DNA from: Haliotis cracherodii
Taxonomy: Eukaryota
Assembly: GCF_022045235.1 (NCBI RefSeq)
Contig: NW_027266275.1
Coordinates: forward strand, 35,526,001-35,590,000
DNA length: 64,000 nt
Direction of reading: 5' to 3'
The translations under genes were made by a program, and so were the position numbers. Shown one piece after another: positions 9,907 to 34,302 of the stretch (position 1 is its first letter; every line of letters starts with the position of its first letter). A model generated the notes under the pieces. The model did no database searches, was not told the DNA's origin, and saw only the letters and a program-made list of their open reading frames with translations.

Positions 9907-12900
9907 CTGGAGAAGAGAGGTTAGTATGGGTTAGTAGTGTTAGTTTGTGTTTGATACAAATATGATACACGACAATATTCAACGCCTCATTTGGTTAGGG
10001 TGAGTAATAATAATATAATCAATGATCATCGATAATCGATTGTTAGTTAAACGACAGATTACAAAAGATGAATGTTCAGTTGTGCTTTGAAAGCAGAATG
10101 AGTTGGCACTGTCCTAAGATAGTCTGGAAGATGGTTCTACTTGATGAATGAGTGAGTTAAGATTTAAAGTCACATCGGCAATATTTCAGGCATATCGTGA
10201 CGAAGTTCCAATAGGCAAGGAGAAATTGGGTTTACCGTGGCATTCAAGATCATTTCACTTATGAAACGACGCGTATGCATGTGTGGCTGTGTGGCTAGTT
10301 GTACTTGTCCACACTTGTGTCTGTTTTACAATGCTGGCCCAGCGGGATACCATGTCGCAGTTCTAACATGGATACCCCTCCTAGACACAGTATACTGACT
10401 CCCAGCAGACGTTTTCTTGTTTCAGCCCCTTAATGTCGGGCGCCATGCAGGATATCACCGAGCACCATCTTTTAACATATGTTGGTATGACGCGGCCAGG
10501 CCATCGAACCATCGAAATTCCGCTGTCAAGGCAGACGCTCTGTCCACTGCACCACGGAGGCGATCAGGGCATCGACCCATCGACCTTCCATTCTCCGGAC
10601 AGACGCTATGTCCACTGCACCACGGAGGCGATCAGGGTATAGACACATCGACCTTCCATTCTCCGGGCAGACGCTCTGTCCACTGCACCACGCAGGCGAT
10701 CAGGGCATCGACACGTCGAACTTCCGCTCTCTGGGCAGACGCTCTGTCCACTGCACCACGGAGGCGATCAGGGCATCGATCCATCGACCTTCCATTCTCC
10801 GGGCAGACGCTCTAGATCTGTCCACTGCACCACGGAGGCGATCAGGGCATCGACCCATCGACCTTCCATTCTCCGGGCAGACGCTCTGTCCACTGCACCA
10901 CGGAGGCGATCAGGGTATCGACACATCGACCTTCCATTCTCCGGGCAGACGCTCTGTCCACTGTACCACGGAGGCGATCAGGGTATCGACCCATCGACCT
11001 TCCATTCTCCGGGCAGACGCTATGTCCACTGCACCACGGAGGCGATCAGGGCATCGACCCATCGACCTTCCATTCTCCGGGCAGACGCTCTGTCCACTGC
11101 ACCACGGAGGCGATCAGGGTATCGACACATCGACCTTCCATTCTCCGGGCAGACGCTCTGTCCACTGTACCACGGAGGCGATCAGGGTATCGACCCATCG
11201 ACCTTCCATTCTCCGGGTAGACGCTCTGTCCACTGCACCACGGAGGCGATCAGGGCATCGACACGTCGACCTTCCATTCTCCGGGCAGACGCTCTAGATC
11301 TGTCCACTGTACCACGGAGGCGATCAGGGCATCGACCCATCGACCTTCCATTCTCCGGGCAGACGCTCTGTCCACTGCACCACAGAGGCGATCAGGGCAT
11401 CGAGATTTCGACCTTCCGCTCTTTGGGCAGACGCTCTGTCAACGGAGCCGGTTTCATTATTTGGTGGTGCAATGAGGTTTAACGTCGCGTCCAAGATTAT
11501 TGCACTTATATAGCGACGTGCATGCATGTGTGCGTGTCTGCTTGTACTAGTCCGGACTGATGCCGATTCATAGTGCTAGCTCACTGAGATACCATGCCGC
11601 AGTTTAATTTGAGTACCTCACTCAGACACAGTCCTTGCTCTAGCCCCTTAATGCCGAACGCTAGACAGGGTAACAACAAGTACCATCTTGTAAAGTCTTT
11701 TTGTATGACGCGGCCGGGGATCGAACCCTTCGCTTCTCCGGGTGGGCGCTCTACCACTAGACCACGAGACCACTGAGGTGGTTTCGTTATTAGGCTTGAG
11801 CAAGGTGATTAAACCTTGCCTGTTGTAATGTAGGCCCAATTTTAATTCTTGTTTTTAGAATTTCTCGACCATAATTGCCAGATACAACTGAACAAAATAA
11901 ATTTAGTGGCTGATGAAGGAAACAAAAAAAATGACTTGCGAATGGCAGACCATCTCACCCAAGGACAGAAATATAGTTCCATACAGATGACGACATGTAG
12001 TTAGTATATTAATACATGGACACCAACGAAATGTTAAATATGAAATGTTGCATCCTTGTTTTAACCTTCTTTTACTTGAAAGTATGTCGCGAAAGCATAA
12101 AATCGTGGCTAAAAAGTTCACCCTGTGGTTAAATCATGCAGAAAGGCTAGATAAACACTAGCTTTAAAGTACAACGTGGCTCGCTGACTTGGTTGATGCA
12201 TATAATCGTATCCCAATTGCGTAGATCGATGCTCATGATGTCAATCACTGGATTGTCTGGTCCAGACTCGATCATTTACACTAGCCGGAATATTGCTGAG
12301 TGCGGAGTTAAACAACGAACAAACACTCAGTGGCTAGATAGAACACTGCGGTTAGATAATACACATTGTGTAGAAAGAACGTTGTGACTAGATAGTCGCA
12401 AGAAGGTACGCAGTTGCTAGAGTGAGTGAGTGAGTTGGGTTTAACGCCGCTTTTAACAGTATTATATTCATATCGCGGCGTGTCAGCTTAATGTGGGAGA
12501 AAAGGCCCGAACGGATGCAGGTGTCAGACGTTTACCACTTCAGTGAAACCCACGAGCACGGGTATGGTTCTGACAAACCTAGAAACATAATCGGGGTGAA
12601 CCGGGATTCGAACCCACAATCATAGGTTTCTGGCGTGCCCAATTTGGGTTTCCTGTAGAGATGTACACATGCTGCACTACAGATACTTTAGCTTGGGTTT
12701 AAAGTTTACGAATTTATGAATTTATGAAAAATCAAATATAGTCGATTAAATTGGAAGGAAGTGGAACTCACGGTTTCTCGTGGTTTGTCTGGGTGTGTAA
12801 GGCCTCTGTGTGTAAGGCCTCTGTGTTGAAGGCATCTGTGTGTAAGGCCTCTGTGTTGAAGGCATCTGTGTGTAAGGCATCTGTGTAGAAGGCCTCTGTG

Positions 12901-15900: not shown

Positions 15901-18900
15901 AAATCAGTGAGCCTGATACAGGTATTTGGTATTTAATTATTAGTATTAGTTTGCAGCATGTATTTTAAGGATTGTAACGAAGAGGTGATACACCTTTAAG
16001 ATTTTGAGTTGTTTATGTTTGGGTCATTCACTACACTACCAGTCCCATTGTTTGTGTTCCGGTTGAGTGGCTGACCCTATTTTTCTGCTTAGGTTTATCT
16101 TTGCGTGCTCTTTAACCCCCATGGTACCCTGCGCGTTCGGTTTCAAACTCAATGTATCAAGGTTAAATCTATCGGAACCTAGCTCTGCATTGAACGCACT
16201 GTAGGTTTCTCCTATAATTGATCATCTCTGATTGACTAATGAAAAACGAGTGTTTTCCAAATTCATGGTAGAATGTACATTTAGTAACATTGGCATATTT
16301 CCATATTTGTAGGTAATTTGATGTCACTGGATAACTCCTGTCATATAGCTGCTGAAGTTCAAATGTAACATACGCTAAGTGTGAGTGAGTGAGTTTGTGA
16401 ATTTATGATTTTACGCCGTTTTTAGCAATATTCCAGGAATATTACGGCGGGGGACACCAGAAATGGGCTTCACACATTGCACCCATTTCGGGAATCGAAC
16501 CCGGGTCTTCGGCGTGACGAGCGAACGCTTTAACCACTAGGCTACCCGACCGCCCTCATACGCTGAGAGGAATGTTTTGTTTATCATCATATGTAAAGAT
16601 ATAAAATTAGGTTTATCCAGAGACCATATAGTAGATTTATGGCCTCTGGTTTATCTGTTGACTACATTTTGACACTTGTCAGGGGGGTACTCAAAGTAAG
16701 TGATCTGGACTACCAGTTGTCGGAATTTCTTTTTGTGGAAGCCTCGGTGGCTGAGTGGGTTAGATCGCTGACTTTGTCTGCTGGCGATTAGGTGCCTCAC
16801 GCTGGTAGGTGTGGGTTCGAATCCCGGACGGGACTCAACCCCAAAAATTACAAGAATCTGTACTTTACTAAGAAAGTGTTATCCCAAATATAACATTTGT
16901 TACACGCAGTAAGAAGTGTAAATTTAGCATTTATATGTATATCCTATGTATCTGTAGTTTGTCTCTCTTGATTGCCATCATTTACATCTAATGTAAAGTA
17001 ATGCCCGTCTTTTATTTACATGCAACAATGAATTAATTACTGATGCATATTTGTATGGTGTTGGTATCAAAGTAATGCTTATCAAACAATTTACCTATAT
17101 CCTTATGATGGTTAGAACTGTTCATATATACAGCTCTAAGTTAGTGTATGTTTGTTTGTTGTTTAACGCCGCACTCAGCAATATTACAGCAATATGACGG
17201 CGGTCTGTAAGTAATCGAATCTGGACCAGACAATCAAGTGATTGATAACATGAGCACCGATCCACGCAATTGTAATCGATGACATGCATCAACCAAGTCA
17301 GCGAGCCTGACCACCCGCCTCTTACGACAAGCATGCATTGCTGAAGACCTATTCTACCCCGGATCTTCACGGGCCAAGTAAGTGTATGATGTATGTGGAA
17401 TGCATAATCGGATTTGCATGTCAGATGAATTATCATGCTCTGTTCGTATTTGTTATATATTTTATACTGTGAGGAATGATGTTCTCATTGGTTGTTATTA
17501 TATGTTTCTGGGTTTCATGAATAAACAGAATTCACACCCGTTGCCGTGTTGACCTTATTCAGCGAAGCACACACCTCTGATGCAATTGCTACTTACTGTA
17601 AATAGGGCCGTTGGTGATGGGTGGTTGGTTCGTCACGACGACCTGCGGGGGAGTGTTGGGTTTCCGAGTGGTGATTGCTGGACGCTGAGTGGTGGCGGGA
17701 CCATGGTGGAAATCTATGTGCCTAGGGGTGAGGAAGTGTAACGGCATTAAACATAGCTAACGGAGATAAGGGCAGGCGTTTTCGTTTTACTGATTTTAGT
17801 ACTGGCAAAATGGTCTGTAATGCTTTAGACAGGAATTTAGAAGGGTTTTATAGTTTAATTGGGACGATAAATTGAGATGAAAATAATCTGACCTCACTGG
17901 TTCGTTCCGGATACCGGATAACTTGAGTTTTAAATTTCTGTCTTGTTTCAAGTTTCAAGAAATGCTCTAAGAGAGTTTGCATTTGAATATCATATCTCAT
18001 TAAAATCAGATCTTGGTGCTCGCTATCGCTTCACACCGCTTTTGACACAATTAGACTTTAACTCCTTTAAACACATCCTAACAAATCCCCGATCACAGAT
18101 CAATGACCATAATCAGGGCGAATGGATTTGGAACCCAAGATTATCGTATCCTGGCACGACTACGGGACGCAACCCTGCACAGGTTGCACGTGGCAATCCG
18201 TGTCCCCAGCACCCTTACAATGACAACAATAGCATCATTGTGAAAGAGAAAAGTCACCGCATTGCTTTAGTCTAAAAACCTTTATATTGTTATTGTAGGC
18301 CTGTATTGGATATATACTACTTGTATTGTTCTTCAAAACAAATCTAAAATCTTACGGTCCTGGTCCTACACAGTTAGTTCTGTCTGGGGTGGCGAGTTCG
18401 TCCACGATGGCGTGGAGTAGGGGATAGGGGCCTTGGCCACAGTCGGCCCCTGAGAAGTCATCCAAGTCCACGGCCCACACCATGACGCCTCCAAAGCCGG
18501 ACGACTTGATGTAGCACACCTGCAGCAAGAGGAGAACAGGGAGATTGGTTCAGTGACAAAAGGGATGTCCTATACAATTCCCTATTAAGTCTTGTACCAT
18601 GTTTTGTCAGGTGAACAATAGACTTGCCTTTGCATGTGTTTGTGACGGGTGCCACCACTGGGGCAGGATCCACTTACTATTTCGCGAACACCTGCTATCA
18701 TCACTGTTTGATAGTAATTCATGAACACATTCGGAATCTTAATGGACTATATGATTCTTGCTTTTGTTTAGCGCCACTTTGAACAGTGTTTTCAGTTATA
18801 TCATTCCAGTTTCGAACATGCTTGGTAAATGTTAGTCTTTTGAGTACAAGTGTTGCATATTTTGTGACTACGTGATTTTAGTTTAAGGTTTCTTTGAACT

Positions 18901-21900
18901 GTATAAAAGTATTCCAGTTATATCACAGTGTGTCAGCTTGATGTGGGAGGAATCCTGAACTAATGCACGTCTTACGCGTTTGCCATGTTGGTAAAACCCA
19001 CGAGCACAGTATGGTGCTGACAAACCTGAAAACATAATCAAGGCCAATATGGGATTCGAACCCACTACTAAATAGGCGCAACTCTGCACTGCTAATAACG
19101 GTGCTTCAAACGGCTAGGCCCGTGCCATTACCAGCTGTAAGGATGACAGTTGTAACGTTGTTTGTCATTCAGGAACGAAACGTCCCAAGTGACGTCGGCC
19201 ACCCAATCTTCCCTGCATCCAACAGCGCTTACCTTCTCCCGGAGACCCCGATTGTCGTCGTAACCCACCCTCACCACCCCTGATCCAGCATGCGCTTACC
19301 TTCTCCCGGAGACCCTGATTGTCATCGTAACTAACCCTCACCTCTCCTGATTCAACATGCCCTTACCTTCTGACGGTGACCCTGATTATCATCGTAACCC
19401 ACCCTCACCTCTCCTGATTCAACATGCCCTTACCTTCTGACGGAGACCCTGATTGTCATCGTAACCCACCCTCACCTCTCCTGATTCAACATGCCCTTGC
19501 CTTCTGACGGGGACCCTGATTGTCATCGTAACCCACCCTCACCTCTCCTGATTCAACATGCCCTTACCTTCTTACGGAGACCCTGATTATCATCGTAACC
19601 CACCCTCACCTCTCCTGATTCAACATGCCCTTACCTTCTGACGGTGACCCTGATTATCATCGTAACCCACCCTCACCTCTCCTGATTCAACATGCCCTTA
19701 CCTTCTCCCGGAGACCCTGATTGTCATCGTAACTAACCCTCACCTCTCCTGATTCAACATGCCCTTACCTTCTTACGGTGACCCTGATTATCATCGTAAC
19801 CCACCCTCACCTCTCCTGATTCAACATGCCCTTGCCTTCTGACGGAGACCCTGATTGTCATCGTAACCCACCCTCACCTCTCCTGATTCAACATGCCCTT
19901 ACCTTCTTACGGAGACCCTGATTATCATCGTAACCCACCCTCACCTCTCCTGATTCAACATGCCCTTACCTTCTGACGGAGACCCTGATTGTCATCGTAA
20001 CCCACCCTCACCTCTCCTGATTCAACATGCCCTTACCTTCTGACGGAGACCCTGATTGTCATCGTAACTAACCCTCACCTCTCCTGATTCAACATGCGCT
20101 TACCTTCTGACGGAGACCCTGATTGTCATCGTAACCCACCCTCCCCTTCCCTTATTCAACATGCCCTTACCTTCTCCCGGAGACCCTGATTGTCATCGTA
20201 ACCCAACCACCTCCCCTTTCCTGATTCAACATGCGCTTACCTTCTCCCGGAGACCCTGATTGTCGTCGTAACCCCACCTTCACCTCCCCTGATTCAACAT
20301 GCGCTTACCTTGTCCCGGAGACCCTGATTGTGCTTATCCTGATTGTCGTCGTAACCCACCACCTCACCTCTCCTGATTCAACATGCGCTTGCCTTCTCCA
20401 GGAGACCTTGATTGTCGTCGTAACCCACCCTCACCTCCCCTTATTAAAAATGCGCTTACCTTCTGACGGAGACCCTGATTGTCATCGTAACCCACCACCT
20501 CACCTCCCCTGATTCAACATGCGCTTCCCTTCACAAGGAGACTCAGTTTGTCGTCGTAGCCCATCCACTTACTACATCAGCGTACCTTCTGCCGTAGACT
20601 CAGCTTGTTGTCGTAGCCCACCCACTGGTTGCCTAGAGTCATATAGCGGACGCGCTGTTCGGGAATATCTACAATTTTGCCACCATTGTGCTCCATTTCA
20701 CAAATCTGAAACCAGAAAAATTCATATTCATGTCAGTCAGGGCTCGAGTCTTATGTGAAAAAAGATTGAATGGGATAAGCAAACAAAACAACATCAGTGC
20801 CATCACGACTTTCCACGGCACAAAAACGTCCCTATAATCTTCAATGGAATTAAGAAATTAATTATTTTTGTGTAAAATTGTATTGTATAATAATTTATAT
20901 CCAAAGTGGTTATGGGACCATCATCATATTTCATTACACAATCGCCATGGCATCAAAAGGCATTTCTTTATTTCTTAAATATTATCAAATAAAAGCACTT
21001 TCTAAAACATAACAATTATCCAAGAGTTTTGAAGGGCAGTCGCTACCCCTATTATGTACGCTTCACTCACCTCCTGGTAAGACAGAAAGCCCGCCTCACG
21101 TGTGTACGTTCCGTTTGCGCCGGGGCCACTGGCAGGTGCACCTAGGGTGTTGTCAGCAGTTGACAGGGTGAACGTGCGACCATATAGAGCCACGCCTATG
21201 TTTAGTTTCTCTCTAGGAGCGCCCATCTTCACCCAGTATTCAGCTGCCCAATGCTAAAACAAAATAAATTTGATATATTCTATTCGCAACGTCAAAAGTG
21301 AATAATTTACTGTGCCTTATTTAACGTGGGTACAAGCTTAAATATTTTCCTGTTAGAAATATATTTTACAAAAAAGGATATGGTGAGGGAACAAGATTAA
21401 ATTGCCCATTGCCTTATTAACATATGTCGATAACCACCTATAGTCAAGTGGACAGAGCGTCTGCCAGGAGAGCGTCAAGTCGGTGGATCGATCACCGTTT
21501 GCGTCATACCTAAAACGATGGTACTTGTTGTTAATTTGCATGGCACTCGACATTATAGGAGATACAACAAGGACTGGTCGGCTCGGGGTCAGTATACTGT
21601 GTAGCTCACATGTCACAGATTTAGACTAAGCCAGATAGAAGACGGTTTTGAATAACATGAACAGACTGAAATTTGAGAGCTTTTCTTCCCTAACATGATA
21701 TGTATTTTCAACATTTCGTCTCTAATTTGCTTGTAAATTGAACATTCTAAGTAGTAAACTGGAATTCATTTTCACATGAAAACAACAACTAACTGCATAA
21801 TTAAATTTTAGAACTCCAACGGCTCAGAAAGTTGATCAATGGTTCCTTAAGTCGGTTCAGAATTTTGAAAAAGACATTTCGATTCATTTTCCGACCGTTA

Positions 21901-24900
21901 TAAAGAGGAACTTTCGACTTTCCGGAACCATTCAACGTAATCAGCTGAGTTTAAATTGTAGGTATTACTGGCCATGATGCGTTAATGTTTATTTTAAAGA
22001 ATTGAAAATTGAGTGAGTTTTCATGAATGTAAACATACCAATGCTTAAAGAGTTTTCAAAGTCAATGATCCTTCATTGTTCAGTGGATATGATCCTTCAT
22101 TGTTCAGTGGGTGTTGACCCTTCATTGGTCAGTGGGTATGATCCTTCATTGTTCAGTGGGTGTTGACCCTTCATTGGTCAGTGGGCATGATCCTTCATTG
22201 ATCACTTGGGTTGATCCTTCATTGGTCAGTGGGCATGATCCTTCATTGTTCAGTGGGTATGATCTTTCATTGGTCAGTGGGTATGATCCTTCATTGGTCA
22301 GTGGGTATGATCCTTCATTGTTCAGTGGGTATGATCCTTCATTGTTCAGTGGACATGATCCTTCATTGGTCAGTGGGCATGATCCTTTATTGGTCAGTGG
22401 GCACGATCCTTCATTGGTCAGTGGGTATGATCCTTCATTGATCAGTAGGTATGATCCTTTATTGATCAGTGAGTATGATCCTTCATTGATCAGTAGGTAT
22501 GATCCTTTATTGATCAGTGAGTATGATCCTTCATTGATCAGTGGGTATGATCCTTTATTGGTCAGTGGGTTGATCCTTCATTGGTCAGTGGGTATGATCC
22601 TTCATTGGTCAGTGGGTATGATCCTTGATTGGTCAGTGGGTATGATCCTTCATTGTTCAGGGGGTATGATCCTTGATTGTTCAGGGGGTATGATCCTTGA
22701 TTGTTCAGTGGGTATGATCCTTGATTGTTTCGGGGTTTATGATCCTTGATTGTTCAGGGGGTATGATCCTTGATTGTTCAGGGGGTATGATCCTTGATTG
22801 TTCAGGGGGTATGATCCTTCTTTGTTCAGTGGGGTTGACCCTTGATTGTTCAGGGGGTATGATCCTTGATTGTTCAGGGGGTATGATCCTTGATTGTTCA
22901 GGGGGTATGATCCTTGATTGTTCAGTGGGTATGATCCTTGATTGGTCAGTGGGATTGATCCTTCTTTGTTCAGGGGGTATGATCCTTCATTGGTCAGTGG
23001 GTATGATCCTTTATTGTTCAGGGGGTATGATCCTTGATTGGTCAGTGGGGTTGATCCTTCTTTGTTCAGTGGGGTTGACCCTTGATTGTTCAGGGGGTAT
23101 GATCCTTGATTGGTCAGTGGGGTTGATCCTTCTTTGTTCAGGGGGTATGATCCTTGATTGTTCAGGGGGTATGATCCTTCATTGTTCAGGGGGTATGATC
23201 CTTGATTGTTCAGGGGATATGATCCTTGATTGTTCAGTGGGGTTGACCCTTCATTGTTCAGGGGGTATGATCCTTGATTGTTCAGGGGGTATGACCCTTC
23301 ATTGTTCAGAGGGTATGATCCTTGATTGTTCAGGGGGTATGATCCTTGATTGTTCAGGGGGTATGATCCTTGATTGTTCAGGGGGTATGATCCTTCATTT
23401 TCACGGGGTATGTTCCTTGATTGTTCAGGGGTATGATCCTTGATTGTTCAGGGGGTATGATCCTTGATTGTTCAGGGGGTATGATCCTTGATTGTTCAGG
23501 GGGTATGATCCTTCATTGTTCAGTGGGATTGATCCTTCTTTGTTCAGGGGGTATGATCCTTGATTGTTCAGGGGATATGATCCTTGATTGTTCAGGGGGT
23601 ATGATCCTTCATTGTTCAGGGGATATGATCCTTGATTGTTCAGGGGATATGATCCTTGATTGTTCAGTGGGGTTGACCCTTGATTGTTCAGGGGGTATGA
23701 TCCTTGATTGTTCAGGGGGTATGACCCTTCATTGTTCAGAGGGTATGATCCTTGATTGTTCAGGGGGTATGATCCTTGATTGTTCAGGGGGTATGATCCT
23801 TCATTTTCACGGGGTATGTTCCTTGATTGTTCAGGGGTATGATCCTTGATTGTTCAGGGGGTATGATCCTTGATTGTTCAGGGGGTATGATCCTTGATTG
23901 TTCAGGGGGTATGATCCTTGATTGTTCAGGGGGTATGATCCTTCATTGTTCAGTGGGATTGATCCTTCTTTGTTCAGGGGGTATGATCCTTGATTGTTCA
24001 GGGGGTATGATCCTTCTTTGTTCAGTGGGGTTGACCCTTGATTGTTCAGGGGGTATGATCCTTGATTGTTCAGGGGGTATGATCCTTCATTGGTCAGTGG
24101 GTATGATCCTTGATTGTTCAGTGGGGTTGACCCTTCATTGTTTAGGGGGTATGATCCTTGATTGTTCAGTGGGGTTGACCCTTCATTGTTCAGGGGGTAT
24201 GATCCTTCATTGGTCAGTGGGTATGATCCTTAATTGTTCAGTGGGGTTAATCCTTCAGTGTTCAGCGGGTATGATCCTTCATTGTTTAGTGAGACTGATC
24301 CTACATTGGTTGGTTGGGGTTGTCCCTTATTGGTCAGTTGGGATGGCCGTTCATTGGTCAGTGGGACTGGTCGTTCATTGGACATTGGTTCTGATCCTTT
24401 ATGGGTCAGTGGTAGATGCGACTGGACCGTCAGTGATCAGTGGGTTTGGTCGTTCATTGGTCATTTGGTATGGGCCTTCATTGGCCGGTGCCACTAGTTC
24501 TACATTGGTGACAATTAGTGTATAATATCTGTTCATTTGAGACATACACAGCTGTCTGACCTGGAAACTCCGCCCACCCCATGTAGGTCTGATCTGATCT
24601 ATGTTTACGACACGAGTGTCTAAATTTCGGTACAATTCCGAGTCGGAGCGAGGGATATACCGGAATTTAGCACGAGTGTCGTAAACATAGTATCACTCAT
24701 GTGATGTTTTTTTTTATAATCCAAGAAGATGTCTACATACAGAGACAACTTTTAGTATTTACCTATAAGGATAGCAAGTTGAAAAATAAGCGGAACGTCG
24801 AATGACGTCAACTATCTTCAGCTGTGACGTCGTTTCACGTGTGACGTCACTCCGACCACATGTCACAATAAGTTTCGCATGACGTCAACAATGCCGTCCG

Positions 24901-27900
24901 GATGACGGAAACAATACAATGTTGTCTCGTTGGCACATATGATTTTGATGAACCCCGATAAGTTTGTCCTCAGGCTAATTTCCATTTCAACCTTATTAAA
25001 AAAGTAATTTAGACCTTTGTCCATTCATTTAGTCAGATAATTTGATCTCCCTTGGCATCTGGACAGGATTTAATATGTTTCAACTGTAACAGCATGCTTT
25101 CCTGGTAATTAATTGGCTAACCGACTGTATGTTTCTTCCTTTCTCAGAATTGAGCGAGATCCAGATGAGCTTTAAAGCACAATGTACTTATCCACAGACC
25201 GTAATTCCTCTAACAGACGCCCTGTCGTGTATTTTATCGGACATAGTAATCCCACAGGATTGATACTTGATTTCTGGTGTTTGTTAACCTCTATTGGAGA
25301 AAATACGGTATTTCTCTTCAAATCTTCACACAATCTGAGAGATTGCATAAACATCTCGCGAGTTGACCTCGATTGCAAAGGCCTCTTGCATGCAAACATG
25401 ACCAAGGCATGTGTCACACATGTTTAAATACATGCACATGTTCTGTGTGATGTTTTCTCCACTGGGACCATGATTTCATAGCCTCACATCTCTCGTGGAA
25501 ATACTCTCACAAATCTCGAGCCAAGCAGATATATTTTCAATGGATAACATTGTGACAATATAATAAATCATACTGCACGAAGTCTTCATCCATTTGAACA
25601 CAGAACACTAAACTGACAAAGATGTTGTTGTTTTTTAAAAAAGGTTCTCGTACAATATTTGCGACAGACATAGACAGATAGCTGGTTCACCAAGTAACGG
25701 AGACGAGGAAAAGAATGTTTTTACTACTGTGTCAATGCCATTCAGTAAACAGAGAAATGTATAACTATGACAGGGTTGGAGTGCGCCCATCTACAAGCTA
25801 TATAACTGTGCTGCACTTCAGTATATAATGCAGTCACCTCCATATGTATAACTGTTATACAGAACAGGGTAAGAGTGTACCCATCTACAAGGTGTAAATT
25901 GGCGATACATTACTGGGTTACAGTGTACCCATCTACCAGGTTTATAACTGTGATACAGTTCAGGGTAACAGTGCACCCATCTACCAGGTGTATAACTGTG
26001 ATGCAGTACAGGGTTACAGTGTGACCATCTACCAGGTGTATAACTGTGATGCAGTACAGGGTTACAGTGCGCCCATCTACCAGGTGTTTAACTGTGAAAC
26101 AGTTCAGGGTTACAGTGCGCCCATCTACCAGGTGTTTAACTGTGATACAGTACTGGGGTACAGTGTACCCATCTACCAGGTGTATAACCGGGATACAGTA
26201 CAGGGTTGCAGTGTACCCATCTACCAGATGTATAGCTGTGATGCAGTACAGGGTTACAGTGCACCCATCTACCAGGTGTATAACTGTGATGCAGTACTGA
26301 GTTACAGTGTACCCATCTACCAGGTTTATAACTGTGATACTGTACAGGGTAACAGTGTACCCATCTACCAGGTGTATAACTGTGATACAGTACTGGGGTA
26401 CAGTGTACCCAACTACCAGGTGTATAACTGTGATACAGTACTGGGGTTCAGTGTACCCATCTACCAGGTTTATAACTGTGATAAAGTACTGGGGTACAGT
26501 GTACCCATCTACCAGGTTTATAACTGGGATACTGTACTGGGTTACAGTGTACCAATCTACCAGGTGTATATCTATGATACAGTACTGGGTTACTGTGTAC
26601 CCATCTAAAAGGTGTATATCGGCGATACATTACTGGGGTTCAGTGTACCCATCTACCAGGTGTATAACTGGGATACTGTACTGGGTAACAGTGTACCAAT
26701 CTACCAGGTGTATAACTATGATACAGTACAGGGTTACAGTGTACCCATCTACCGTGTTTATAACTGTGATACAGTACTGGGTTACTGTGTACCAATCTAC
26801 AAGGTGTATATCGGCGATACATTACTGGGGTTCAGTGTACCCGTCTACAAGGTGTATAACTGTGATGCAGTACATGGTTACATTGTACCCATCTCACAGG
26901 TTTATAACTGTGATACAGTACAGGGTTACAATGTACCCATCTCACAGGTTTATAACTGTGATACACTACTGGGGTACAGTGTAACCATCTACCAGGTGTT
27001 TAACTGTGATACAGTACTGGGTTACAGTGTACCCATCTCACAGGTTTATAACTGTGATACACTACTGGGGTACAGTGTAACCATCTACCAGGTGTATAAC
27101 TGTGATACAGTACCTGGTTACAGTGTACCCATCTACCAGGTGTATAACTGTGATGCAGTACTGGGGTACAGTGCATCCATCTTCGAGGTTTATAACTGTG
27201 ATACAGTACTGGGTTACAGTGTACCCATCTACCAGGTTTATAACTGGGATGCAGTACTGGGGTACAGTGCATCCATCTTCGAGGTTTATCACTGTGATAC
27301 AGTACAGGGTTGCAGTGTACCCATCTACCAGGTTTATAACTGGGATACTGTACTGGGTTACAGTGCACCAATCTACCAGGTGTATAACTATGATACAGTA
27401 CAGGGTTACAGTCTACCCATCTACTGGGTTTATAACTGTGATACAGTACTGGGTTTCTGTGTACCCATCTACCAGGTGTACAACTATGATGCAGTACAGG
27501 GTTACAGTGTACCCATCTACCAGATGTATAACTGTGATACAGTACTGGGTTACAGGGTACCCATCTACATGTACCAGGTGTATATCGGCGATACATTACT
27601 GGGTTTCAGTGTACCCATCTACCAGGTTTATAACTGGGATACTGTACTGGGTTACAGTGTACCCATCTACCAGGTGTATAACTATGATACAGTACAGGGT
27701 TACAGTGTACCCATCTACCAGGTTTATAACTGTGATACAGTAATGGGTTACTGTATACCCATCTACAAGGTGTATATCGGCGATACATTACTGGGGTTCA
27801 GTGTACCCGTCTACCAGGTGTATAACTGTGATGCAGTACTGGGTTACAGCGTACCCATCTACCAGGTGTATAACCGGGATACAGTACAGGGTTACAGTGT

Positions 27901-30900
27901 ACCCATCTACCAGGTGTACAACTATGATACAGTACAGGGTTACAGTGCGCCCATCTACCAGGTGTATAACTGTGATGCAGTTCAGGGTTACAGTGCGCAC
28001 ATCTACCAGGTGTACAACTACTGAGTTACAGTGCCCCGGTTTACCAGATTGAGGTACTTGTCATCGTTGGTCTCGTCAATGCGTGGATACAGAGGGCTGT
28101 GAATACCGGTGTGATTCTCCCAACTGCCGTGCAGGTCATAGGTCATCACACTGATGAAGTCCAAGATCCTAGGCAGCATCAAAACACAACATGATGCCGG
28201 ACCAGAATAAAGTTTGTTTGTTGATCATATCCGCACTCAGCAATATTCCAGCTATATGACGGCAGTCTGTAAATAATCGAGTTGGGACCAGAGAATCCAG
28301 TGACTGATATCATGAGCATATATCGACGTACGCAATTGGGATACGATGACATACATCAACCAAGTCAGCGAGCCTTACAACCCAATCCCGTTAGTCGTCT
28401 CTTAAGACAAGCACATTCGCAATTACATCTACTTATAAATACTTGCCATGTCTACTTAATATTGTGTTAGTGACAAGTCTGTAGGGTTGTTTGTTTGGTT
28501 AGAAACTGAATATTACACGGGCAATGCCATTTTTTCAGTATATTTTCGAAGACAAATTTACCTGAAAATTAATCCTTTCACCTGATATGATGGTCACTCA
28601 CTCACTTATAACGTCTTCCTGACCATGTGACTTACATTCCTTACCGTGAAATTTCCGGGATTTCGTATGCAGTGTCAATGTTGGGTTTTCCCGCCGCCAC
28701 AGCCGCCGTCAACATCAGTCGGGGTCTACCAGATTGCTGCGCTTCCACTACAAAGGCATCGTACAGTGCCTGAAAACAATTCTCTATTCGGCTATTCCAG
28801 TCCAATGTAGATTGTCTTAACGTTTGTAAAATAAAATAAGCACAAGGGGTGCAACTCTGCACAGCGAATCGCCCTAGACAACTACCCCCCCCCCCCCCCC
28901 CCCCACCCGTGCCCCCCGTAAATAATCAAGTCTGACAAACCAGTGGTTGATATTGTAAGCACCACAACGTATGGTTTTGGTGACAAACAATCAACCAAAT
29001 ATCCGAGTCCGATCCATTTAGCAATAGAGAGTTCGGGACATATCTATTGAAATTGATAAAGTCACCTACACGAAGACTCGTCCCCCTGTCGATCAATGTT
29101 AGGCGCGAAGACACCGCAAACCAACCAGGATGCGCATATAACTGTAAGTAATTTGGTCAAAGAATCCTCCTTAATATTCTTTGTTGATATGCAAAGTTTG
29201 TGTCAAACAATATACCAAAGTGACATTCACAATTGTTTTACCATATCAAATAACAATTGGTTGTAAATGTCAACCGTGATATATTTCGAAAATATCCTTG
29301 TAAACTTACAAAACCAAGGTGAATGTGGTACAACAAGCGGGCTATTTGCATGACCGTTTGCGCGAAGACGGAACCAAGTTGATAAAATGGTCACGCGAGG
29401 GGCACGAGTCGTTATTCGGCTTGTCCCGGAATAGCACAAGTAGTCACGCGTGGGATCTCTTCTAACCCGGCTCAAGTGGTACCTGAAGCAATTCGGTATA
29501 GTGATGTTTGTCCTCTGGTGGACCGCCTCTGTTTGCAGGATACTCCCAGTCAACATCCACGCCATCGAAGTTGTTGTCTCGGACGAATTTGACAACGGAG
29601 TCCGCGAACTCCTTCCTCCCCGAGGGAGTGTGGGACATCTCATGGAACGGCATCGACCTAAGATTCCAGCCCCCAACAGCAAGCAGGGTCTTCATGCTAG
29701 GATTGATATTCTTCAACGCCATAAAACGCTCGAACCTGCATCGAAAATGTTAATCGAACAGGTAATTACTGCATTAATGTGAGTGAGTGAGTGAGTGAGT
29801 GAGTGAGTGAGTGAGTTGGGTTTAACACCACTTTTAACCGTATTCTAGTTATATCACGGCGTGTCATCATAATGTTGGAGGAAAGCCCGAAATGATGCAG
29901 GTAACACCCACTAGCACGGATATGGTGCCGAAACACGTAGAAACACAATCGCTGACGGGCATTATAGGAAATATAGAACCCTGAACAATAATATGTTCAC
30001 CTGATTTTTTAAAAGTTTACATCACTTACATAACTTACTGTGGAAGTACATTGGAGCTAACCACCTAACGAGCACGGGTATGAGAAACTCAGCTTCATAA
30101 TCGGGGTGAATCTGGGATTCAAACCCACGATGAAAGTTGGTGGAACGAATATCCTGCTTTGAGCAAAATAAATTTATCATTCTGTCATTAATCGTTTACT
30201 GCTGAATGTTCGAGATGGTGGTCGATGTCAGTCATTTTTTGAGACTCAGTTACACTCACATTCCTCTTTTCCAGGCTGTGGACAGGTCATTCCATTCAAA
30301 AGCTTTTATCCTGTTGCCTAGCAACGTGGCGAAGGCGTACACGTAGTGCGTGCAGAGGTTAGGGTTAACATTCTCCGGCGTGTATTTCCCTTTATCGGGA
30401 CGATACTGAGACCAGTTGGTGTAGTAACAAACTCTTCTGAGGTCTGAACCTGTAACATGATAGATGACACGTATGACAGTTGGTGTAGTAACACACTCTC
30501 CTATGACCTGAACCTGTAACATGAAGGATGACATGTATGACAGTTGATGTAGTAACACACTCCCCTGTGCCCTGAACCTGTAACATGATGGATGACATGT
30601 ATGACAGTTGGTGTAGTAATACACTCCCCCGTGACCTGAACCTGTAACATGATGGATGACATGTATGACAGTTGGTGTAGTAACACACTCTCCGGTGCCC
30701 TGAACCTGTAACATGATGGATGATACGTATGACAGTTGGTGTAGTAACACACTCTCCTGTGCCCTGAACCTGTAACGTGATGGATGACATGTATGACAGT
30801 TGGTGTAGTAGCACACTCTCCTGTGACCTGAACCTGTAACATGATGGGTGACATGTATGACAGTTGGTGTAGTAACACACTCTCCTGTGCCCTGATCCTG

Positions 30901-33900
30901 TAACGTGATGGGTGACATGTATGACAGTTGGTGTAGTAACACACTCTCCTGTGCCCTGAACCTGTAACATGATTGATGACAAGTATGACAGTTGGTGTAG
31001 TAATACACTCCCCTGTGCCCTGAGCCTGTAACGTGATGGATGACATGTATGGCAGTTGATGTAGTAACACACTCTCCTGTGACCTGAACCTGTAACGTGA
31101 TGGATGACATGTATGACAGTTGGTGTAGTAACACACTCCCCCGTGACCTGAACCTGTAACATGAAGGATGACATGTATGACAGTTGATGTAGTAACACAT
31201 TTTCCTGTGACCTGAACCTGTAACGTGATGGATGACATGTATGACAGTTGGTGTAGTAATACACTCCCCCGTGACCTGAACCTGTAACATGATGGATGAC
31301 ATGTATGACAGTTGGTGTAGTAACACACTCTCCGGTGCCCTGAACCTGTAACATGATGGATGATACGTATGACAGTTGGTGTAGTAACACACTCTCCTGT
31401 GCCCTGAACCTGTAACGTGATGGATGACATGTATGACAGTTGGTGTAGTAGCACACTCTCCTGTGACCTGAACCTGTAACATGATGGGTGACATGTATGA
31501 CAGTTGGTGTAGTAACACACTCTCCTGTGCCCTGATCCTGTAACGTGATGGGTGACATGTATGACAGTTGGTGTAGTAACACACTCTCCTGTGCCCTGAA
31601 CCTGTAACATGATTGATGACAAGTATGACAGTTGGTGTAGTAATACACTCCCCTGTGCCCTGAGCCTGTAACGTGATGGATGACATGTATGGCAGTTGAT
31701 GTAGTAACACACTCTCCTGTGACCTGAACCTGTAACGTGATGGATGACATGTATGACAGTTGGTGTAGTAACACACTCCCCCGTGACCTGAACCTGTAAC
31801 ATGAAGGATGACATGTATGACAGTTGATGTAGTAACACATTTTCCTGTGACCTGAACCTGTAACGTGATGGATGACATGTATGACAGTTGGTGTAGTAAC
31901 ACACTCCCCTGTGCCCTGAACCTGTAACGTGATGGATGACATGTATGGCAATTGGTGTAGTAACACACTCTCCTGTGACCTGAACCTGTAACATGATGGA
32001 TGACATGTATGACAGTTGGTGTAGTAACACACTCCCCTGTGCCCTGAACCTGTAACGTGATGGATGACATGTATGACAGTTGGTGTAGTAACACACTCCC
32101 CTGTGCCCTGAACCTGTAACGTGATGGATGACATGTATGGCAATTGGTGTAGTAACACACTCCCCTGTGCCCTGAACCTGTAACGTGATGGATGACATGT
32201 ATGACAGTTGGTGTAGTAACACACTCCCCCGTGACCTGAACCTGTAACATGATGGATGACATATGTAACAGTTTATATAGTGACACACTCTCCTGTGCCC
32301 TAAACGTGTACCATGGTGGATGACATGTATGGCAGTTGGTGTAGTAACACACTTCCTGTGCCCTGACCCTTGATTCCATGCATTGCACTGGATATATGTT
32401 GTCTTGTCAGAACATTGTTTTCTGCGAGGCTGATTATGGGTGTGTGAAGCTACAGTCACACAGACGATGCGACCGCGATGCAACCTCTTGGCGACTGATT
32501 CCTTTGCTTTGCAACTTGTCAGTGATCGATCGGCAACTGTTTACCGCAGATACGGCGAAATGTTTGTAACTGGTTGAGAACGATCGGTGACTAGTCAGCG
32601 AATGTTCGGTGACTTGTTGTAACTGAACGGGGACTGGTCGGTGACTAGTTGTCGATCGATCACCGATCAAAACATAATGCATATAAAAAGGGATCTTTTC
32701 TGAATGAAACAACTTCTTTGCAAGTTGTCAAGATGTTAACAACAGAACAGTTGTAGTTGCCCCGCCTGTAAAGAATAAATCAAAATGCTGCAGTTGCTGC
32801 CATGATGATGTACAGAAGAATGAGACTGACAAGGCGAAGGCAGTATTGGCTGAGACCTTGGATCGCAAGAAGGCCACAGCTAGGAGACTATGGGAATCTG
32901 ATGGCAGAGTTGGAGAGAGACAGTCGTGGTGTTTTCGAGGGTTTCCTCAGAATGGAGCTTGTCAACATCGGACATCTCTAGCTCTTACTCCTCATCAGGT
33001 ATCGGCCTCTTCTCTTGTTGAGATGTTGTTGGCTGTGGCTCCATTGTAGCAGACCTGTGCACCACAGCAGTTGTCTCTATTGTATCGTCTACAATTTCTG
33101 GTTCTTTAAGTTTCCTCCCTTTACGGACCATAGTGAAGAATGGAAATAATTGATGTGAACTGTCTTAGTACTTATGACAAAACGATGCTGTAAGGCATAG
33201 ACAGGTCTTTTTATAGATTGTGACATGTTGCAAACCCAACGGCGAATGATCGACGCACGCTTGGAAACCACTTTGCCACCGATCGACAACCAGTCACCGA
33301 TGAAGCGCAGGTCGATCACTGCCTCATCACTGATCAATCACCGATAGGTCGTCACCAGGTTGCAAAGTGTCAACACCTTTGTGTAGACGAAACCGATCGC
33401 CGCACAGTGGAAACCAATCTGCGATTAAAATAACACCACTTGGGGACCTCTAGGAGACCTTTAGGAGACCAATGAAACCCCCGTGCGACCAAATCGGTCG
33501 CAGCCAGTCTTTTGTGCATGTTCAAAAGACTGGTTGCGACCGAATGGGTTTTGCAACCGCTCTGAAACCTTGTAGCGACCTCAGTGAAACCTTTCAGAGA
33601 CCCCTGAAACCTCATTGCAATTGTCAAATATTTTGGTCGCCAGGAGGCTGCATCGAGGTCGCATTGTCTGGGTGACTGAGGCTTTAGCGACCGACCATTT
33701 GTCTTGAACAAATTATTCAAAAACACTGTTCTGTTCATTTTTGACTCATTTAAGCCAAACGTCTGTAATGATGACGCCATTTGTCTCAAACCTGCAAGTG
33801 ATATATTGTGTCAACATAGTGTCAACATGTATGATAGGTTAATAACAACATTATTAAGTTCTCGATAAATAAAGATGTGTCGTTTCGAGTTGGCCCAAAA

Positions 33901-34302
33901 TGGTCGCCATCACACCCCATCCTATATGTACACTGCCAAAGTTCTCTCTGGTGTCGTGTTTATATTATATACTCATGTGTTGTGGCCTCTGCAGTCCCTA
34001 TATTCATATATATCTATCCGAGTTCGAAATTAATTACCGAGTCATTTGTGCAATCTTAATAACGATCGAAAATGATACAATTGTTTCTTTTATCAATGAT
34101 AAAAATTGGGCAAAATGATGTTTTCTAATTAGCTTGCTGTGATAAAACATAAAAAAATGTGGACATTATGAAAAGATGGTATAATCAAACGGATACACAG
34201 GAGTGTTTGTCAAGACACGGTTATCTTACCTTGGACAGCGTGCAGTGCCAGGAAGATGCCTCCCGCCACGGGGAGCAGCAACAGGGATACCCGGGGGATC
34301 AT
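9719..34302 (-). CDS. Chitinase gene A (GH18 + 2x CBM14, secreted), 11 coding exons, ~664 aa
   Basis: Manually assembled exons 34230-34302, 30260-30449, 29483-29735, 28645-28769, 28045-28168, 21071-21253, 20586-20705, 18356-18519, 17597-17721, 12772-13221, 9719-9906. All introns are GT-AG and the phases join to a 1995-nt ORF. Motifs: VCYYTNWSQYR, LLAVGGWN, FDGVDVDWEYP, VMTYDLHG, WVGYD, WAVDLDDF and two 6-Cys CBM14 domains. Confidence 0.93.
10510..11440 (-). repeat. 68-bp tandem array (~13-14 units) of a tRNA-derived SINE head
   Basis: Minus-strand unit CGCCTCCGTGGTGCAGTGGACAGAGCGTCTGCCCGGAGAATGGAAGGTCGATGGGTCGATGCCCTGAT resembles the head of SINE family A; period 68 (10531, 10599, 10667). 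Confidence 0.92.
11465..11775 (-). mobile_element. SINE family A copy
   Basis: Homologous to 768-1113; TSD-like ggtttc(a/g)ttatt. Confidence 0.82.
12772..13221 (-). CDS. Chitinase A exon 10 (CBM14 #1 + Thr-rich/TQRPY repeats)
   Basis: FC..SDFYPSPHSCSAYFIC..TCLAGLRFNPKGKYCD..C six-Cys pattern. Confidence 0.92.
13355..13632 (+). mobile_element. tRNA-derived SINE family C (~280 bp)
   Basis: TGGCCCAGTCG / GGTTCGAATCC boxes; TSD tcaaaagatcg; more copies at 5220-5500(-), 12420-12642(-), 36427-36690(-), 53432-53703(+), 18880-19130(-). Confidence 0.86.
14700..15510 (+). mobile_element. Decayed LINE reverse-transcriptase fragment
   Basis: QGRVISSWLFLVYINDLI..LLAE.TTL..SPKGLQ remnants with stops. 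Confidence 0.55.
16382..16555 (-). mobile_element. SINE family B copy
   Basis: Reverse complement of 49617-49786. Confidence 0.85.
17597..17721 (-). CDS. Chitinase A exon 9 (Thr/Pro linker)
   Basis: Phase-compatible; homologous to 54407-54531; cctag| and |gtaagt. Confidence 0.85.
18356..18519 (-). CDS. Chitinase A exon 8 (VCYIKSSGFGGVMVWAVDLDDF...)
   Basis: GH18 C-terminal WxxDLDDF motif; tgcag| and |gtaag. Confidence 0.93.
19200..20622 (-). repeat. 67-bp tandem array (~21 units) made of the exon-7 donor junction
   Basis: Minus-strand unit GTGGGTTACGATGACAATCAGGGTCTCCGTCAGAAG|GTAAGGGCATGTTGAATCAGGAGAGGTGAGG; period 67 (19361->19428). Confidence 0.96.
20586..20705 (-). CDS. Chitinase A exon 7 (ICEMEHNGG...QWVGYDNKLSLRQK)
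   Basis: WVGYD motif; ttcag| and |gtacg. Confidence 0.9.
21071..21253 (-). CDS. Chitinase A exon 6 (HWAAEYWVKMGAPREKLNIGVALYGR...YQE)
   Basis: GH18 motif; tttag| and |gtgag. Confidence 0.92.
22065..24480. repeat. 24-bp minisatellite (~100 units)
   Basis: Unit gatccttgattgttcagggggtat and variants (gatccttcattggtcagtgggtat). Confidence 0.97.
25760..28047 (-). repeat. 48-bp tandem array (~47 units) starting at the exon-5 donor
   Basis: Plus-strand unit cagggttacagtgtacccatctaccaggtgtataactgtgatacagta, period 48 (25981->26029); contiguous with the exon-5 end CTG|GTAAAC. Confidence 0.96.
28045..28168 (-). CDS. Chitinase A exon 5 (ILDFISVMTYDLHGSWE...YLNL)
   Basis: MTYDLHG motif; cctag| and |gtaaa. 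Confidence 0.92.
28645..28769 (-). CDS. Chitinase A exon 4 (ALYDAF...RLMLTAAVAAGKPNIDTAYEIPEIS)
   Basis: GH18 homology; ttcag| and |gtaag. Confidence 0.92.
29483..29735 (-). CDS. Chitinase A exon 3 (catalytic FDGVDVDWEYP)
   Basis: GH18 DxxDxDxE motif; tgcag| acceptor and |gtacc donor. Confidence 0.95.
30260..30449 (-). CDS. Chitinase A exon 2 (SDLRRVCYYTNWSQYRP...AWKRG)
   Basis: GH18 N-terminal motif; ttacag| acceptor and |gtgag donor. Confidence 0.9.
30413..32370 (-). repeat. 64-bp tandem array (~30 units) made of the exon-2 acceptor junction (27 nt intron + 37 nt exon)
   Basis: Unit TCATACATGTCATCCATCATGTTACAG|GTTCAGGGCACAGGAGAGTGTGTTACTACACCAACTG; acceptor G positions 30450, 30514, 30578...32242 in exact 64-nt register. 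Confidence 0.97.
32448..33683 (+). mobile_element. PIF/Harbinger-type non-autonomous DNA transposon
   Basis: ~50-bp imperfect TIRs (agctacagtcacacagacgatgcgacc... / ...ggtcgcattgtctgggtgactgaggct) with TGA/TTA flanks. Internal remnant RRRQYWLRPWIARRPQLGDYGNLMAELE..FLRM resembles Harbinger transposase N-termini. Confidence 0.75.
34230..34302 (-). CDS. Chitinase A coding exon 1 (signal peptide MIPRVSLLLLPVAGGIFLALHAVQG)
   Basis: ttccag|ATG start, hydrophobic peptide, AAG|GTAAG donor; homologous to 63600-63672. Confidence 0.85.

What the first reader, a model, noticed from the sequence alone, without database searches (positions are those of the whole stretch)
19200..32370. Splice-junction minisatellites: three arrays in one chitinase gene are each built from, and anchored on, a real splice site
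Seen: three tandem arrays in gene A begin exactly at an exon boundary and their units contain the junction. They are the exon-2 acceptor (64 bp = 27 intron + 37 exon nt), the exon-7 donor (67 bp = ~36 exon + ~31 intron nt) and the exon-5 donor (48 bp, CTG|GTA). Together they place roughly 95 extra splice-site-like copies next to the real sites. Paralog B has short versions at the exon-2 and exon-7 junctions. Established: tandem duplication across an AG|GT site is a proposed route to intron gain, and intronic VNTRs can alter splicing. Inference: either a mutational process that preferentially amplifies splice junctions (e.g. splicing/R-loop-coupled slippage) or a copy-number-tunable splice-decoy system controlling chitinase output and isoforms.
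Basis: partly seen in the sequence, partly recalled or inferred. Interest (0 to 1): 0.85.

Follow-up and report, generated by a model that had tools for sequence, protein, structure and literature searches.

The report
Splice-junction ("mirage") minisatellites in abalone chitinases
Three long tandem repeat arrays in an abalone chitinase gene really are built from copies of the gene's own exon-intron junctions, a little-known kind of repeat called a "mirage" in lancelets. It recurs far too often here to be chance, but the gene models ignore the extra splice sites.

Summary
The window is Haliotis cracherodii (black abalone) chromosome DNA carrying two tandem GH18 chitinase genes on the minus strand.

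In gene A:
- A 64-bp array (30 decoys) ends on the exon-2 acceptor.
- A 67-bp array (about 20 units) starts on the exon-7 donor.
- A 48-bp array (about 45 units) starts on the exon-5 donor.

Gene B and a third paralog outside the window share the first two arrays. Other chitinase genes carry unrelated arrays at other junctions. In total, 7 of 14 independent genic arrays span a junction, against 0.95 expected (P about 1e-5).

Genome-wide, arrays with three periodic perfect donor motifs are about 5.5 times denser than arrays with control motifs.

This kind is known: "mirage" minisatellites in amphioxus, and the human F7, IFI6 and CBS junction VNTRs. I found no mollusc report in the library searched.

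RefSeq models of four of these genes use only the authentic sites. A regulatory decoy role therefore has no support, though it remains untested.

Read tools and further genome fetches were closed, so junction usage was not measured.

First-stage notes flag the same class in at least 8 other windows of this genome. Those notes are unchecked.

The parts
30413..32370 (-). 64-bp array in intron 1 of gene A. It has 30 decoy units, each 27 intron nt plus 37 exon nt, ending on the authentic exon-2 acceptor. A 640-bp higher-order block is duplicated inside it.
30260..30449 (-). Gene A coding exon 2. It begins GSDLRRVCYYTNW. The authentic acceptor is the 3'-most copy of the array.
34230..34302 (-). Gene A coding exon 1 (signal peptide). 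Intron 1 is 3780 nt, against 192 nt in gene B.
25845..28047 (-). 48-bp array (about 45 units) at the start of intron 5 of gene A. The first, degenerate unit contains the authentic donor CTG|GTAAAC. 33 CTG|GTA copies follow. Genes B and C have no array at this junction.
28045..28168 (-). Gene A coding exon 5.
19212..20585 (-). 67-bp array (about 20 units, each about 35 exon nt plus 32 intron nt) at the start of intron 7 of gene A. 16 decoys read AAG|GTAAG[C/G]. A TGA lies 3 codons after the authentic donor.
20586..20705 (-). Gene A coding exon 7. The authentic donor AAG|GTACGC is the 5'-most copy.
18356..18519 (-). Gene A coding exon 8.
22065..24286 (-). 24-bp x93 array in mid-intron 5 of gene A. 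It is not junction-derived and serves as an internal contrast.
10497..11440 (-). 68-bp x14 array in intron 10 of gene A. The unit looks tRNA-like. It is not at a junction.
63408..63535 (-). Gene B: two 64-bp decoy units upstream of the exon-2 acceptor (63407). Intron 1 is 192 nt: a 64-nt original piece plus the two units.
55871..56423 (-). Gene B: 66/67-bp donor array (8.8 units) following exon 7 (56424-56543).

Best explanation
These are junction-spanning ('mirage'-type) minisatellites. A short piece of DNA (19-67 bp) straddling an exon-intron boundary was duplicated in tandem. It was then amplified on the intron side by unequal exchange or replication slippage.

Only the copy that is contiguous with the rest of the exon can give a working mRNA: the 5'-most donor or the 3'-most acceptor. 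That is the copy the gene models use. All other copies are silent pseudo-sites inside the intron.

The arrays turn over quickly, so copy number differs several-fold between paralogs. They are older than the A/B/C gene duplication.

In this abalone genome such arrays form or persist at junctions much more often than at other genic positions. The bias is shown; its cause is inferred to be mutational and is unknown. The arrays are most likely neutral or slightly deleterious by-products, not a regulatory device.
For: Shown:
- Unit anatomy and register with exact GT-AG junctions.
- The arrays are not dispersed elements. The 64-, 67- and 48-bp units occur only in this chitinase cluster.
- Genes A, B and C share the arrays, with 30, 2 and about 21 decoys for the 64-bp array. 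The authentic units are more alike across paralogs (87.5-94%) than the authentic unit is to the decoys in genes A (85%) and B (77%); in gene C the authentic unit matches its decoys at 91%. A versus C decoys are 91% identical, the same as within-array identity, which fits ongoing exchange.
- Independent junction arrays with unrelated units occur in other paralogs: genes D and E at the exon-4 donor (45 bp) and the exon-6 donor (27 bp, up to x98), gene F at the exon-5 donor (48 bp x41), and an acceptor array (54 bp) in a second cluster.
- Enrichment: 7 junction arrays of 14 against 0.95 expected, P = 1.2e-5. The replication set gives 4 of 9 against 0.61, P = 0.0018.
- Genome-wide, arrays with 3 periodic AGGTRAGT motifs reach about 2.0 loci/Mb against about 0.37/Mb for two control motifs, P about 1e-6.
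- RefSeq proteins of genes A, B, C and F use only the authentic sites, and H. rufescens models agree.

From the literature:
- The same structures in amphioxus Adh3, TnC, globins and PGBD5 do not disturb splicing (PMC3087553, PMC3902484).
- In human F7 only the most upstream of the identical donors is used (PMC1557585).
Against: - No RNA reads could be laid, so minor use of decoy sites is not excluded.
- RefSeq models are predictions guided by homology and would favour canonical junctions anyway.
- A passive neutral model does not by itself explain the 5- to 8-fold junction excess.
- The decoy donors of the 67-bp array match the consensus better (7/9) than the authentic donor (6/9), so why they would be ignored is unexplained.
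- The 64-nt unit is stop-free in all three frames. Only 0.8% of shuffles are, which could hint at constraint.
- The genome-wide pattern test shows donor motifs inside arrays, not that those arrays abut real exons.
Confidence: 0.72

Rival explanations
1. The arrays are a functional splice-decoy or splice-tuning system. Clusters of pseudo-sites would bind U1 or U2AF and set the rate, fidelity or isoform output of chitinase mRNAs, tunable through copy number.
For: - The decoy donors are as strong as or stronger than the authentic donor.
- 28 of 30 decoy acceptors are intact.
- Several arrays are in frame and stop-free: the 27-bp, 45-bp and gene F 48-bp arrays. The 64-nt unit is open in all three frames, P about 0.008.
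- The arrays have been kept at the same junctions in three paralogs.
Against: - Four RefSeq models ignore the decoys, including gene F with its in-frame array.
- Copy number varies 10-fold between close paralogs (30 against 2), which does not fit a tuned dose.
- Splice dinucleotides show no more conservation than other columns.
- The open-frame tally among arrays with a period divisible by 3 is what chance gives: about 46% per 16 codons.
- The published analogues are silent (PMC3087553, PMC3902484, PMC1557585).
Confidence: 0.12
2. Ordinary intronic minisatellites lie next to exons by chance in a genome that is very rich in minisatellites.
For: - The genome is packed with arrays. About 31 arrays of period 10 or more lie in 174 kb.
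- Control motifs also give thousands of periodic matches.
Against: - The units contain 7-37 nt of exon sequence, in register with exact junctions.
- The Poisson-binomial probability is 1.2e-5, and the result replicates at P = 0.0018.
- There is a 5.5-fold excess of donor-motif arrays per locus.
Confidence: 0.03
3. The arrays are intermediates of intron or exon birth. This is the Rogers-type model, in which a tandem duplication across AG|GT creates new introns. On this view the arrays are raw material for new gene structure and not silent by-products.
For: - Most units carry AG|GT.
- Gene B intron 1 is exactly 3 x 64 nt.
- The model was proposed for amphioxus globin mirages (PMC3087553).
Against: - All junctions involved are shared by the paralogs A, B and C, so no new intron position is seen.
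- The first 37 nt of gene B intron 1 show no homology to the exon part of the unit (6 of 37). That intron was therefore not made from units.
- The GT that starts exon 2 sits in a poor donor context: 2 of 6 matches to GTRAGT.
Confidence: 0.06
4. The arrays are an assembly artefact: collapsed or mis-joined reads creating false arrays.
For: Long arrays are hard to assemble. An amphioxus mirage was mis-assembled in a draft genome (PMC3087553).
Against: - Units differ from one another by 8-9% in a structured way, including a 640-bp higher-order repeat.
- The same arrays occur in three paralogs with different copy numbers.
- The contig is a chromosome-scale sequence of 82 Mb.
- Copy numbers may be inexact, but the arrays' existence is not in doubt.
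Confidence: 0.02

Closest known systems
'Mirage' minisatellites of amphioxus (Adh3, troponin C, globins BflGb6 and BflGb9, PGBD5)
   Same: Both are tandem repeats whose unit spans an exon-intron boundary, at either donors or acceptors. Units are 10-160 bp and carry AG/GT signals. The arrays lie in the intron, are unstable in length and show concerted evolution that excludes the boundary unit. Normal splicing is reported to be undisturbed (PMC3087553, PMC3902484).
   Different: The lineage is a gastropod mollusc, not a cephalochordate. The arrays here are much longer: up to 30, 45 and 98 units, against 3-6 in the globins. Several sit in one gene, and they recur across a gene family. Splicing and polymorphism were not measured here.
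Human junction-spanning VNTRs: F7 intron 7 (37 bp), IFI6 (6-16), CBS intron 13, LMNB2, PDGF
   Same: The first monomer spans the exon-intron boundary, so the authentic donor is followed by identical pseudo-donors. In F7, LMNB2 and PDGF only the most upstream site is used (PMC1557585).
   Different: The human cases are isolated, with 5-25 repeats, and all sit at donors. Here acceptor arrays occur as well, and the class appears frequent genome-wide. IFI6 and CBS do use the first one or two pseudo-sites, which was not testable here.
Intron gain by tandem duplication across AG|GT (Rogers model)
   Same: A tandem duplication that contains AG|GT creates extra splice-site pairs.
   Different: No new intron position is created here. 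The duplicates lie inside pre-existing introns and are removed together with them.
Recursive (ratchet) splice sites
   Same: Each 64-bp unit has an acceptor followed directly by GT (CAG|GT).
   Different: The regenerated 5' site (GTTCAG) matches GTRAGT at only 2 of 6 positions. No evidence of stepwise removal was found, and this was not tested with RNA.

Membership tests
Mirage (junction-spanning) minisatellite | Head-to-tail array of a 10-160 bp unit | tested here: met
   TRF finds 64 bp x30.6, 67 bp x about 20 and 48 bp x45.
Mirage (junction-spanning) minisatellite | The unit contains both exon and intron sequence, with the splice signal, in register with the authentic junction | tested here: met
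   The units hold 27 intron + 37 exon nt (64 bp) and about 35 exon + 32 intron nt (67 bp). The 48-bp unit holds only 3 exon nt. Junctions were fixed by exact models.
Mirage (junction-spanning) minisatellite | The array lies on the intron side and the authentic site is the copy joined to the exon body | tested here: met
   RefSeq proteins P0001, P0002, P0107 and P0111 use the 3'-most acceptor and the 5'-most donors.
Mirage (junction-spanning) minisatellite | Extra sites do not disturb normal splicing | not testable with these tools
Only annotation-level support is available.
Mirage (junction-spanning) minisatellite | Length instability or polymorphism | tested here: inconclusive
   Copy number differs between paralogs: 30, 2 and about 21 decoys for the 64-bp array, and about 20, 8.8 and about 13 units for the 67-bp array. 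There is a 640-bp internal duplication. No second haplotype or individual was available.
Dispersed repeat or transposon-derived satellite | The unit is found at many unrelated places in the genome | tested here: not met
   Whole-genome DNA searches find the 64-, 67- and 48-bp units only in this chitinase cluster.
Rogers-type new intron from tandem duplication | The intron position is new, and the intron sequence is made of duplicated exon sequence | tested here: not met
   The intron positions are shared by paralogs A, B and C. The first 37 nt of gene B intron 1 are unrelated to the unit (6 of 37).
Recursive splice site | An acceptor followed by a strong regenerated donor (AG|GTRAGT) | tested here: not met
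   The units read CAG|GTTCAG, 2 of 6 matches to GTRAGT.

The most novel reading that the evidence does not exclude
A duplication or expansion process aimed at exon-intron junctions operates genome-wide in abalone, as it seems to in amphioxus. It would have produced thousands of splice-site arrays. It might be coupled to co-transcriptional splicing. Alternatively, the G-rich donor motif, which resembles classical minisatellite cores, might act as a slippage or recombination hot spot. If so, these arrays would be a general and so far overlooked source of intron growth, cryptic sites and possibly new exons.
Probability: 0.35. Interest if true: 0.7.

Novelty: new member of a known kind. Interest (0 to 1): 0.5.

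Why it matters
Junction-spanning minisatellites have been described gene by gene in lancelets and in a few human genes, and their origin is called unclear in that literature.

Finding them in a mollusc shows that the phenomenon is not a lancelet oddity. Here they are long, occur several to a gene, recur independently across a gene family and leave a genome-wide signal.

This offers a genome with probably thousands of natural cases. Two open questions could be tested on them: why tandem arrays nucleate at splice junctions, and how the spliceosome picks one site among dozens of identical ones.

There is also a practical consequence. Such arrays are often open reading frames continuous with the exon, up to 710 aa here, and can mislead gene prediction.

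Tried and rejected
- Sampling unrelated gene families. An annotation-anchored genome-wide test was therefore impossible.
- First permutation test. It placed whole arrays at random and was flawed, because kilobase arrays swallow exons. I replaced it with a seed-unit null.
- Amphioxus origin. My first guess from the literature was wrong; the proteins identify Haliotis cracherodii.
- The original mirage paper (PMC117041) is not held in the library.
- Raw match totals of the pattern searches are dominated by a few huge satellites and were not used. Loci per megabase were counted instead.
- The acceptor-motif test gave only a 2.2-fold excess in matches. No per-locus control was run for it.
- ARAGORN and Rfam did not call the tRNA-like 68-bp unit.
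- Spliced models. Exons were searched by reference, and the exact exon boundaries were computed inside a script against the RefSeq proteins.
Full report
**What is there**

- 30413-32370: 64 bp x30.6
- 25845-28019: 48 bp x45.2
- 22065-24286: 24 bp x92.7
- 19212-20563: 67 bp, about 20 units

Downstream, the second gene has short versions at 63371-63547 (64 bp x2.8) and 55871-56464 (66 bp x8.8).

Open reading frames on the minus strand carry GH18 chitinase motifs. A protein search used the mechanical ORF that runs through the 64-bp array into exon 2, scored on its exon part only. It returned two proteins of Haliotis cracherodii, at 100% and 97% identity, on a contig of 82,358,895 bases. The whole-genome tool places the window on a contig of that same length. 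The accessions are XP_071105821 for gene A and XP_071105822 for gene B. The organism is therefore black abalone, not a lancelet as I first guessed from the literature.

**Exact junctions**

I matched the two RefSeq proteins to the window inside a script, requiring GT-AG introns and an exact translation. This gives 11 coding exons for each gene. No joined spliced sequence was saved or sent to any search tool.

In gene A the exon-2 acceptor is at 30449, exon 5 ends at 28045 and exon 7 ends at 20586.

The 64-bp array:
- Printed in 64-base register, it runs without a single indel into the acceptor.
- Each unit is 27 intron bases ending in TTACAG plus the first 37 exon bases.
- 28 of 30 decoys keep the acceptor.
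- A 640-bp block of ten units is duplicated inside the array.

The 67-bp array:
- Each unit is about 35 exon bases, encoding WVGYDDNQGLREK, plus about 32 intron bases.
- The authentic donor AAG|GTACGC is the first copy.
- 16 later copies read AAG|GTAAG[C/G], a better match to the consensus (7 of 9 against 6 of 9).
- All of them lie behind a TGA three codons after the authentic donor.

The 48-bp array:
- It begins 3 bases before the exon-5 donor.
- Its first unit is the junction itself with a 9-base deletion.
- 33 CTG|GTA copies follow.

The exon content of the 48-bp unit is only about 3 nt. About 77 copies, not 95, keep an intact core.

**Not a dispersed repeat, and older than the gene duplication**

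Whole-genome DNA searches find the three units only in this chitinase cluster. The 64-bp unit also occurs in a third paralog, gene C, 27 kb beyond the window. Gene C has about 21 decoys there and a 67-bp array at its exon-7 donor.

The authentic 64-bp units of A, B and C are 87.5-94% alike. The authentic unit of gene A is only 85% like its decoys, and that of gene B 77%; in gene C the figure is 91%. Decoys of A and C are 91% alike, the same as within each array (92.4% and 91.1%). Both are 79% like the decoys of B. This fits arrays that predate the duplication, keep exchanging or were inherited large, and leave the selected boundary unit out of homogenisation. The same behaviour was described for amphioxus globin mirages (PMC3087553).

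**Recurrence**

I fetched 110 kb beyond the window and 90 kb of a second chitinase cluster. I ran TRF and tblastn on them and read every candidate junction base by base. The following arrays have unrelated units and sit at other junctions:

| Gene(s) | Junction | Unit | Make-up and copies |
|---|---|---|---|
| D and E | exon-4 donor | 45 bp | 7 exon + 38 intron nt |
| D and E | exon-6 donor | 27 bp | 22 exon + 5 intron nt; up to 98 copies; in frame and stop-free |
| F | exon-5 donor | 48 bp | 22 exon + 26 intron nt; 41 copies; in frame and stop-free |
| Second cluster, gene 1 | an acceptor | 54 bp | x10.6 |
| Second cluster, gene 3 | ends 15 nt before an acceptor | 19 bp | no exon content |

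Counting arrays shared by paralogs once, 7 of 14 independent non-coding genic arrays span a junction. The null lets a seed unit of the observed length fall anywhere in the gene once arrays are collapsed. It expects 0.95 (Poisson-binomial P = 1.2e-5). Leaving out the arrays that prompted the finding, 4 of 9 span a junction against 0.61 expected (P = 0.0018). My earlier permutation test was flawed and is discarded.

**Genome-wide signal**

Pattern searches of the whole genome were still possible. Each pattern asked for three copies of an 8-mer spaced 10-40 bases apart.

| Motif | Loci | Span of contig 1 covered |
|---|---|---|
| Donor, AGGTRAGT | 17 (15 unit families) | first 8.33 Mb |
| Reversed motif | 11 | 31.4 Mb |
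| GT swapped to TG | 12 | 30.2 Mb |

That is about 2.0 loci per Mb against 0.37 per Mb, a 5.5-fold excess (binomial P about 1e-6). Some 'control' loci themselves contain GGTGAGT, so the excess is probably understated.

The acceptor motif TTTYCAGG gave 861 matches against 383 for its reverse.

These tests show splice-donor motifs to be over-represented in minisatellite units. They do not show that those arrays abut exons. First-stage notes report the same class in at least eight other windows of this genome. They are unchecked leads, not evidence.

**Are the decoys used?**

The only evidence is from annotation. The RefSeq proteins of genes A, B, C and F, and the H. rufescens models, join exon 1 to the last acceptor and use the first donors. 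This includes gene F, where use of a later donor would add in-frame 16-residue repeats and escape NMD.

Predicted consequences of decoy use:
- 67-bp and 48-bp arrays of gene A: a stop codon within 3 or 8 codons.
- 64-bp array: two decoys in three shift the frame. Every third would insert 64 residues per three units, because the unit is open in all three frames, a property of only 0.8% of shuffles.

Splice dinucleotides in the decoys are not more conserved than their neighbours. I see no positive evidence for a regulatory decoy system, but it has not been refuted.

**What it is, compared with what is known**

[quoted passage not shown] They were first described in Adh3 and later in troponin C, globins and PGBD5. 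Normal splicing is reported there, and the mechanism of origin is stated to be unclear (PMC3087553, PMC3902484).

In humans, F7 intron 7, IFI6, CBS, LMNB2 and PDGF carry minisatellites whose first monomer spans the donor. Usually only the most upstream site is used (PMC1557585).

The abalone arrays meet every structural criterion of this class (see the membership table). They are not transposon-derived. They are not Rogers-type new introns, because the intron positions are shared by paralogs A, B and C and the first 37 nt of gene B intron 1 match the unit at only 6 of 37 positions. They are not recursive splice sites, because the regenerated donor is poor.

Full-text searches found no report of such arrays in molluscs. 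A paper on the Pacific abalone TSSK1-like gene notes only a polymorphic 27-bp intronic minisatellite (PMC6905558).

**Verdict**

It is a new lineage, and a strikingly dense example, of a known but obscure kind of repeat.

The decoy-regulation idea is unsupported.

Mechanism, with status marked:
- A local tandem duplication across a junction: shown by the anatomy.
- Amplification by unequal exchange or slippage: inferred from the higher-order repeats and the copy-number differences.
- Selection of the exon-contiguous site: annotation-level evidence plus published analogues.
- An unexplained preference for junctions: shown as a pattern, mechanism speculative.

No further genome letters could be fetched from then on.

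Noticed in passing
window 10497-11440: A 68-bp x14 array in intron 10 of gene A has a unit that reads like a tRNA or SINE head (GTGGTGCAGTGG...GGTCGATGGGTCGATGCCC). ARAGORN and Rfam at the gathering threshold do not call it. It is probably a SINE-derived satellite and unrelated to any junction.
   Followed up: partly
window 63408-63599: Gene B intron 1 is exactly 192 nt, or 3 x 64. It consists of an original 64-nt intron plus two 64-bp units. The first 37 nt are unrelated to the unit (6 of 37 matches), so the equal length looks like coincidence and not intron birth from units.
   Followed up: yes
window 30259-32388 (minus); L020:404-2143: Stop-free arrays make very long mechanical ORFs continuous with real exons: 710 aa through the 64-bp array and 579 aa through gene F's 48-bp array. 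Many GH18 exon matches elsewhere in the genome also sit in open frames of 370-950 aa. This is a trap for gene callers and a quick proxy for finding more such arrays.
   Followed up: partly
window 32371-34229: Gene A intron 1 holds about 1.86 kb between the original intron start and the array. Gene B lacks this. Gene C has a different insertion of about 400 bp at the same spot. These are probably insertions that came after the array formed.
   Followed up: no
window 12793-12917 and 51037-51128: A 15-bp coding repeat (QRPYT-type linker) lies in exon 10 of both genes, between the two chitin-binding domains. It is a separate, translated tandem repeat.
   Followed up: partly
G000:C12:35643948-35650732 (L016/L017): A 41-bp x165 array (6.8 kb) lies 856 bp after the last recognised GH18 exon of gene D. 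No exon was recognised next to it.
   Followed up: partly
G000:C12:35612575-35613715 (L013): A 33-bp x35 array in intron 5 of gene C has a unit containing GAGGTGGGCGG. Like the 67-bp and 27-bp units, it resembles the G-rich core of classical hypervariable minisatellites. This is a possible clue to why donor-like sequence expands.
   Followed up: no
window 6853-6924 (-) and 49621-49692 (+): Two weak tRNA-model hits (30.1 bits, just over threshold). They are likely SINE heads and not tRNA genes.
   Followed up: no
   Followed up: no
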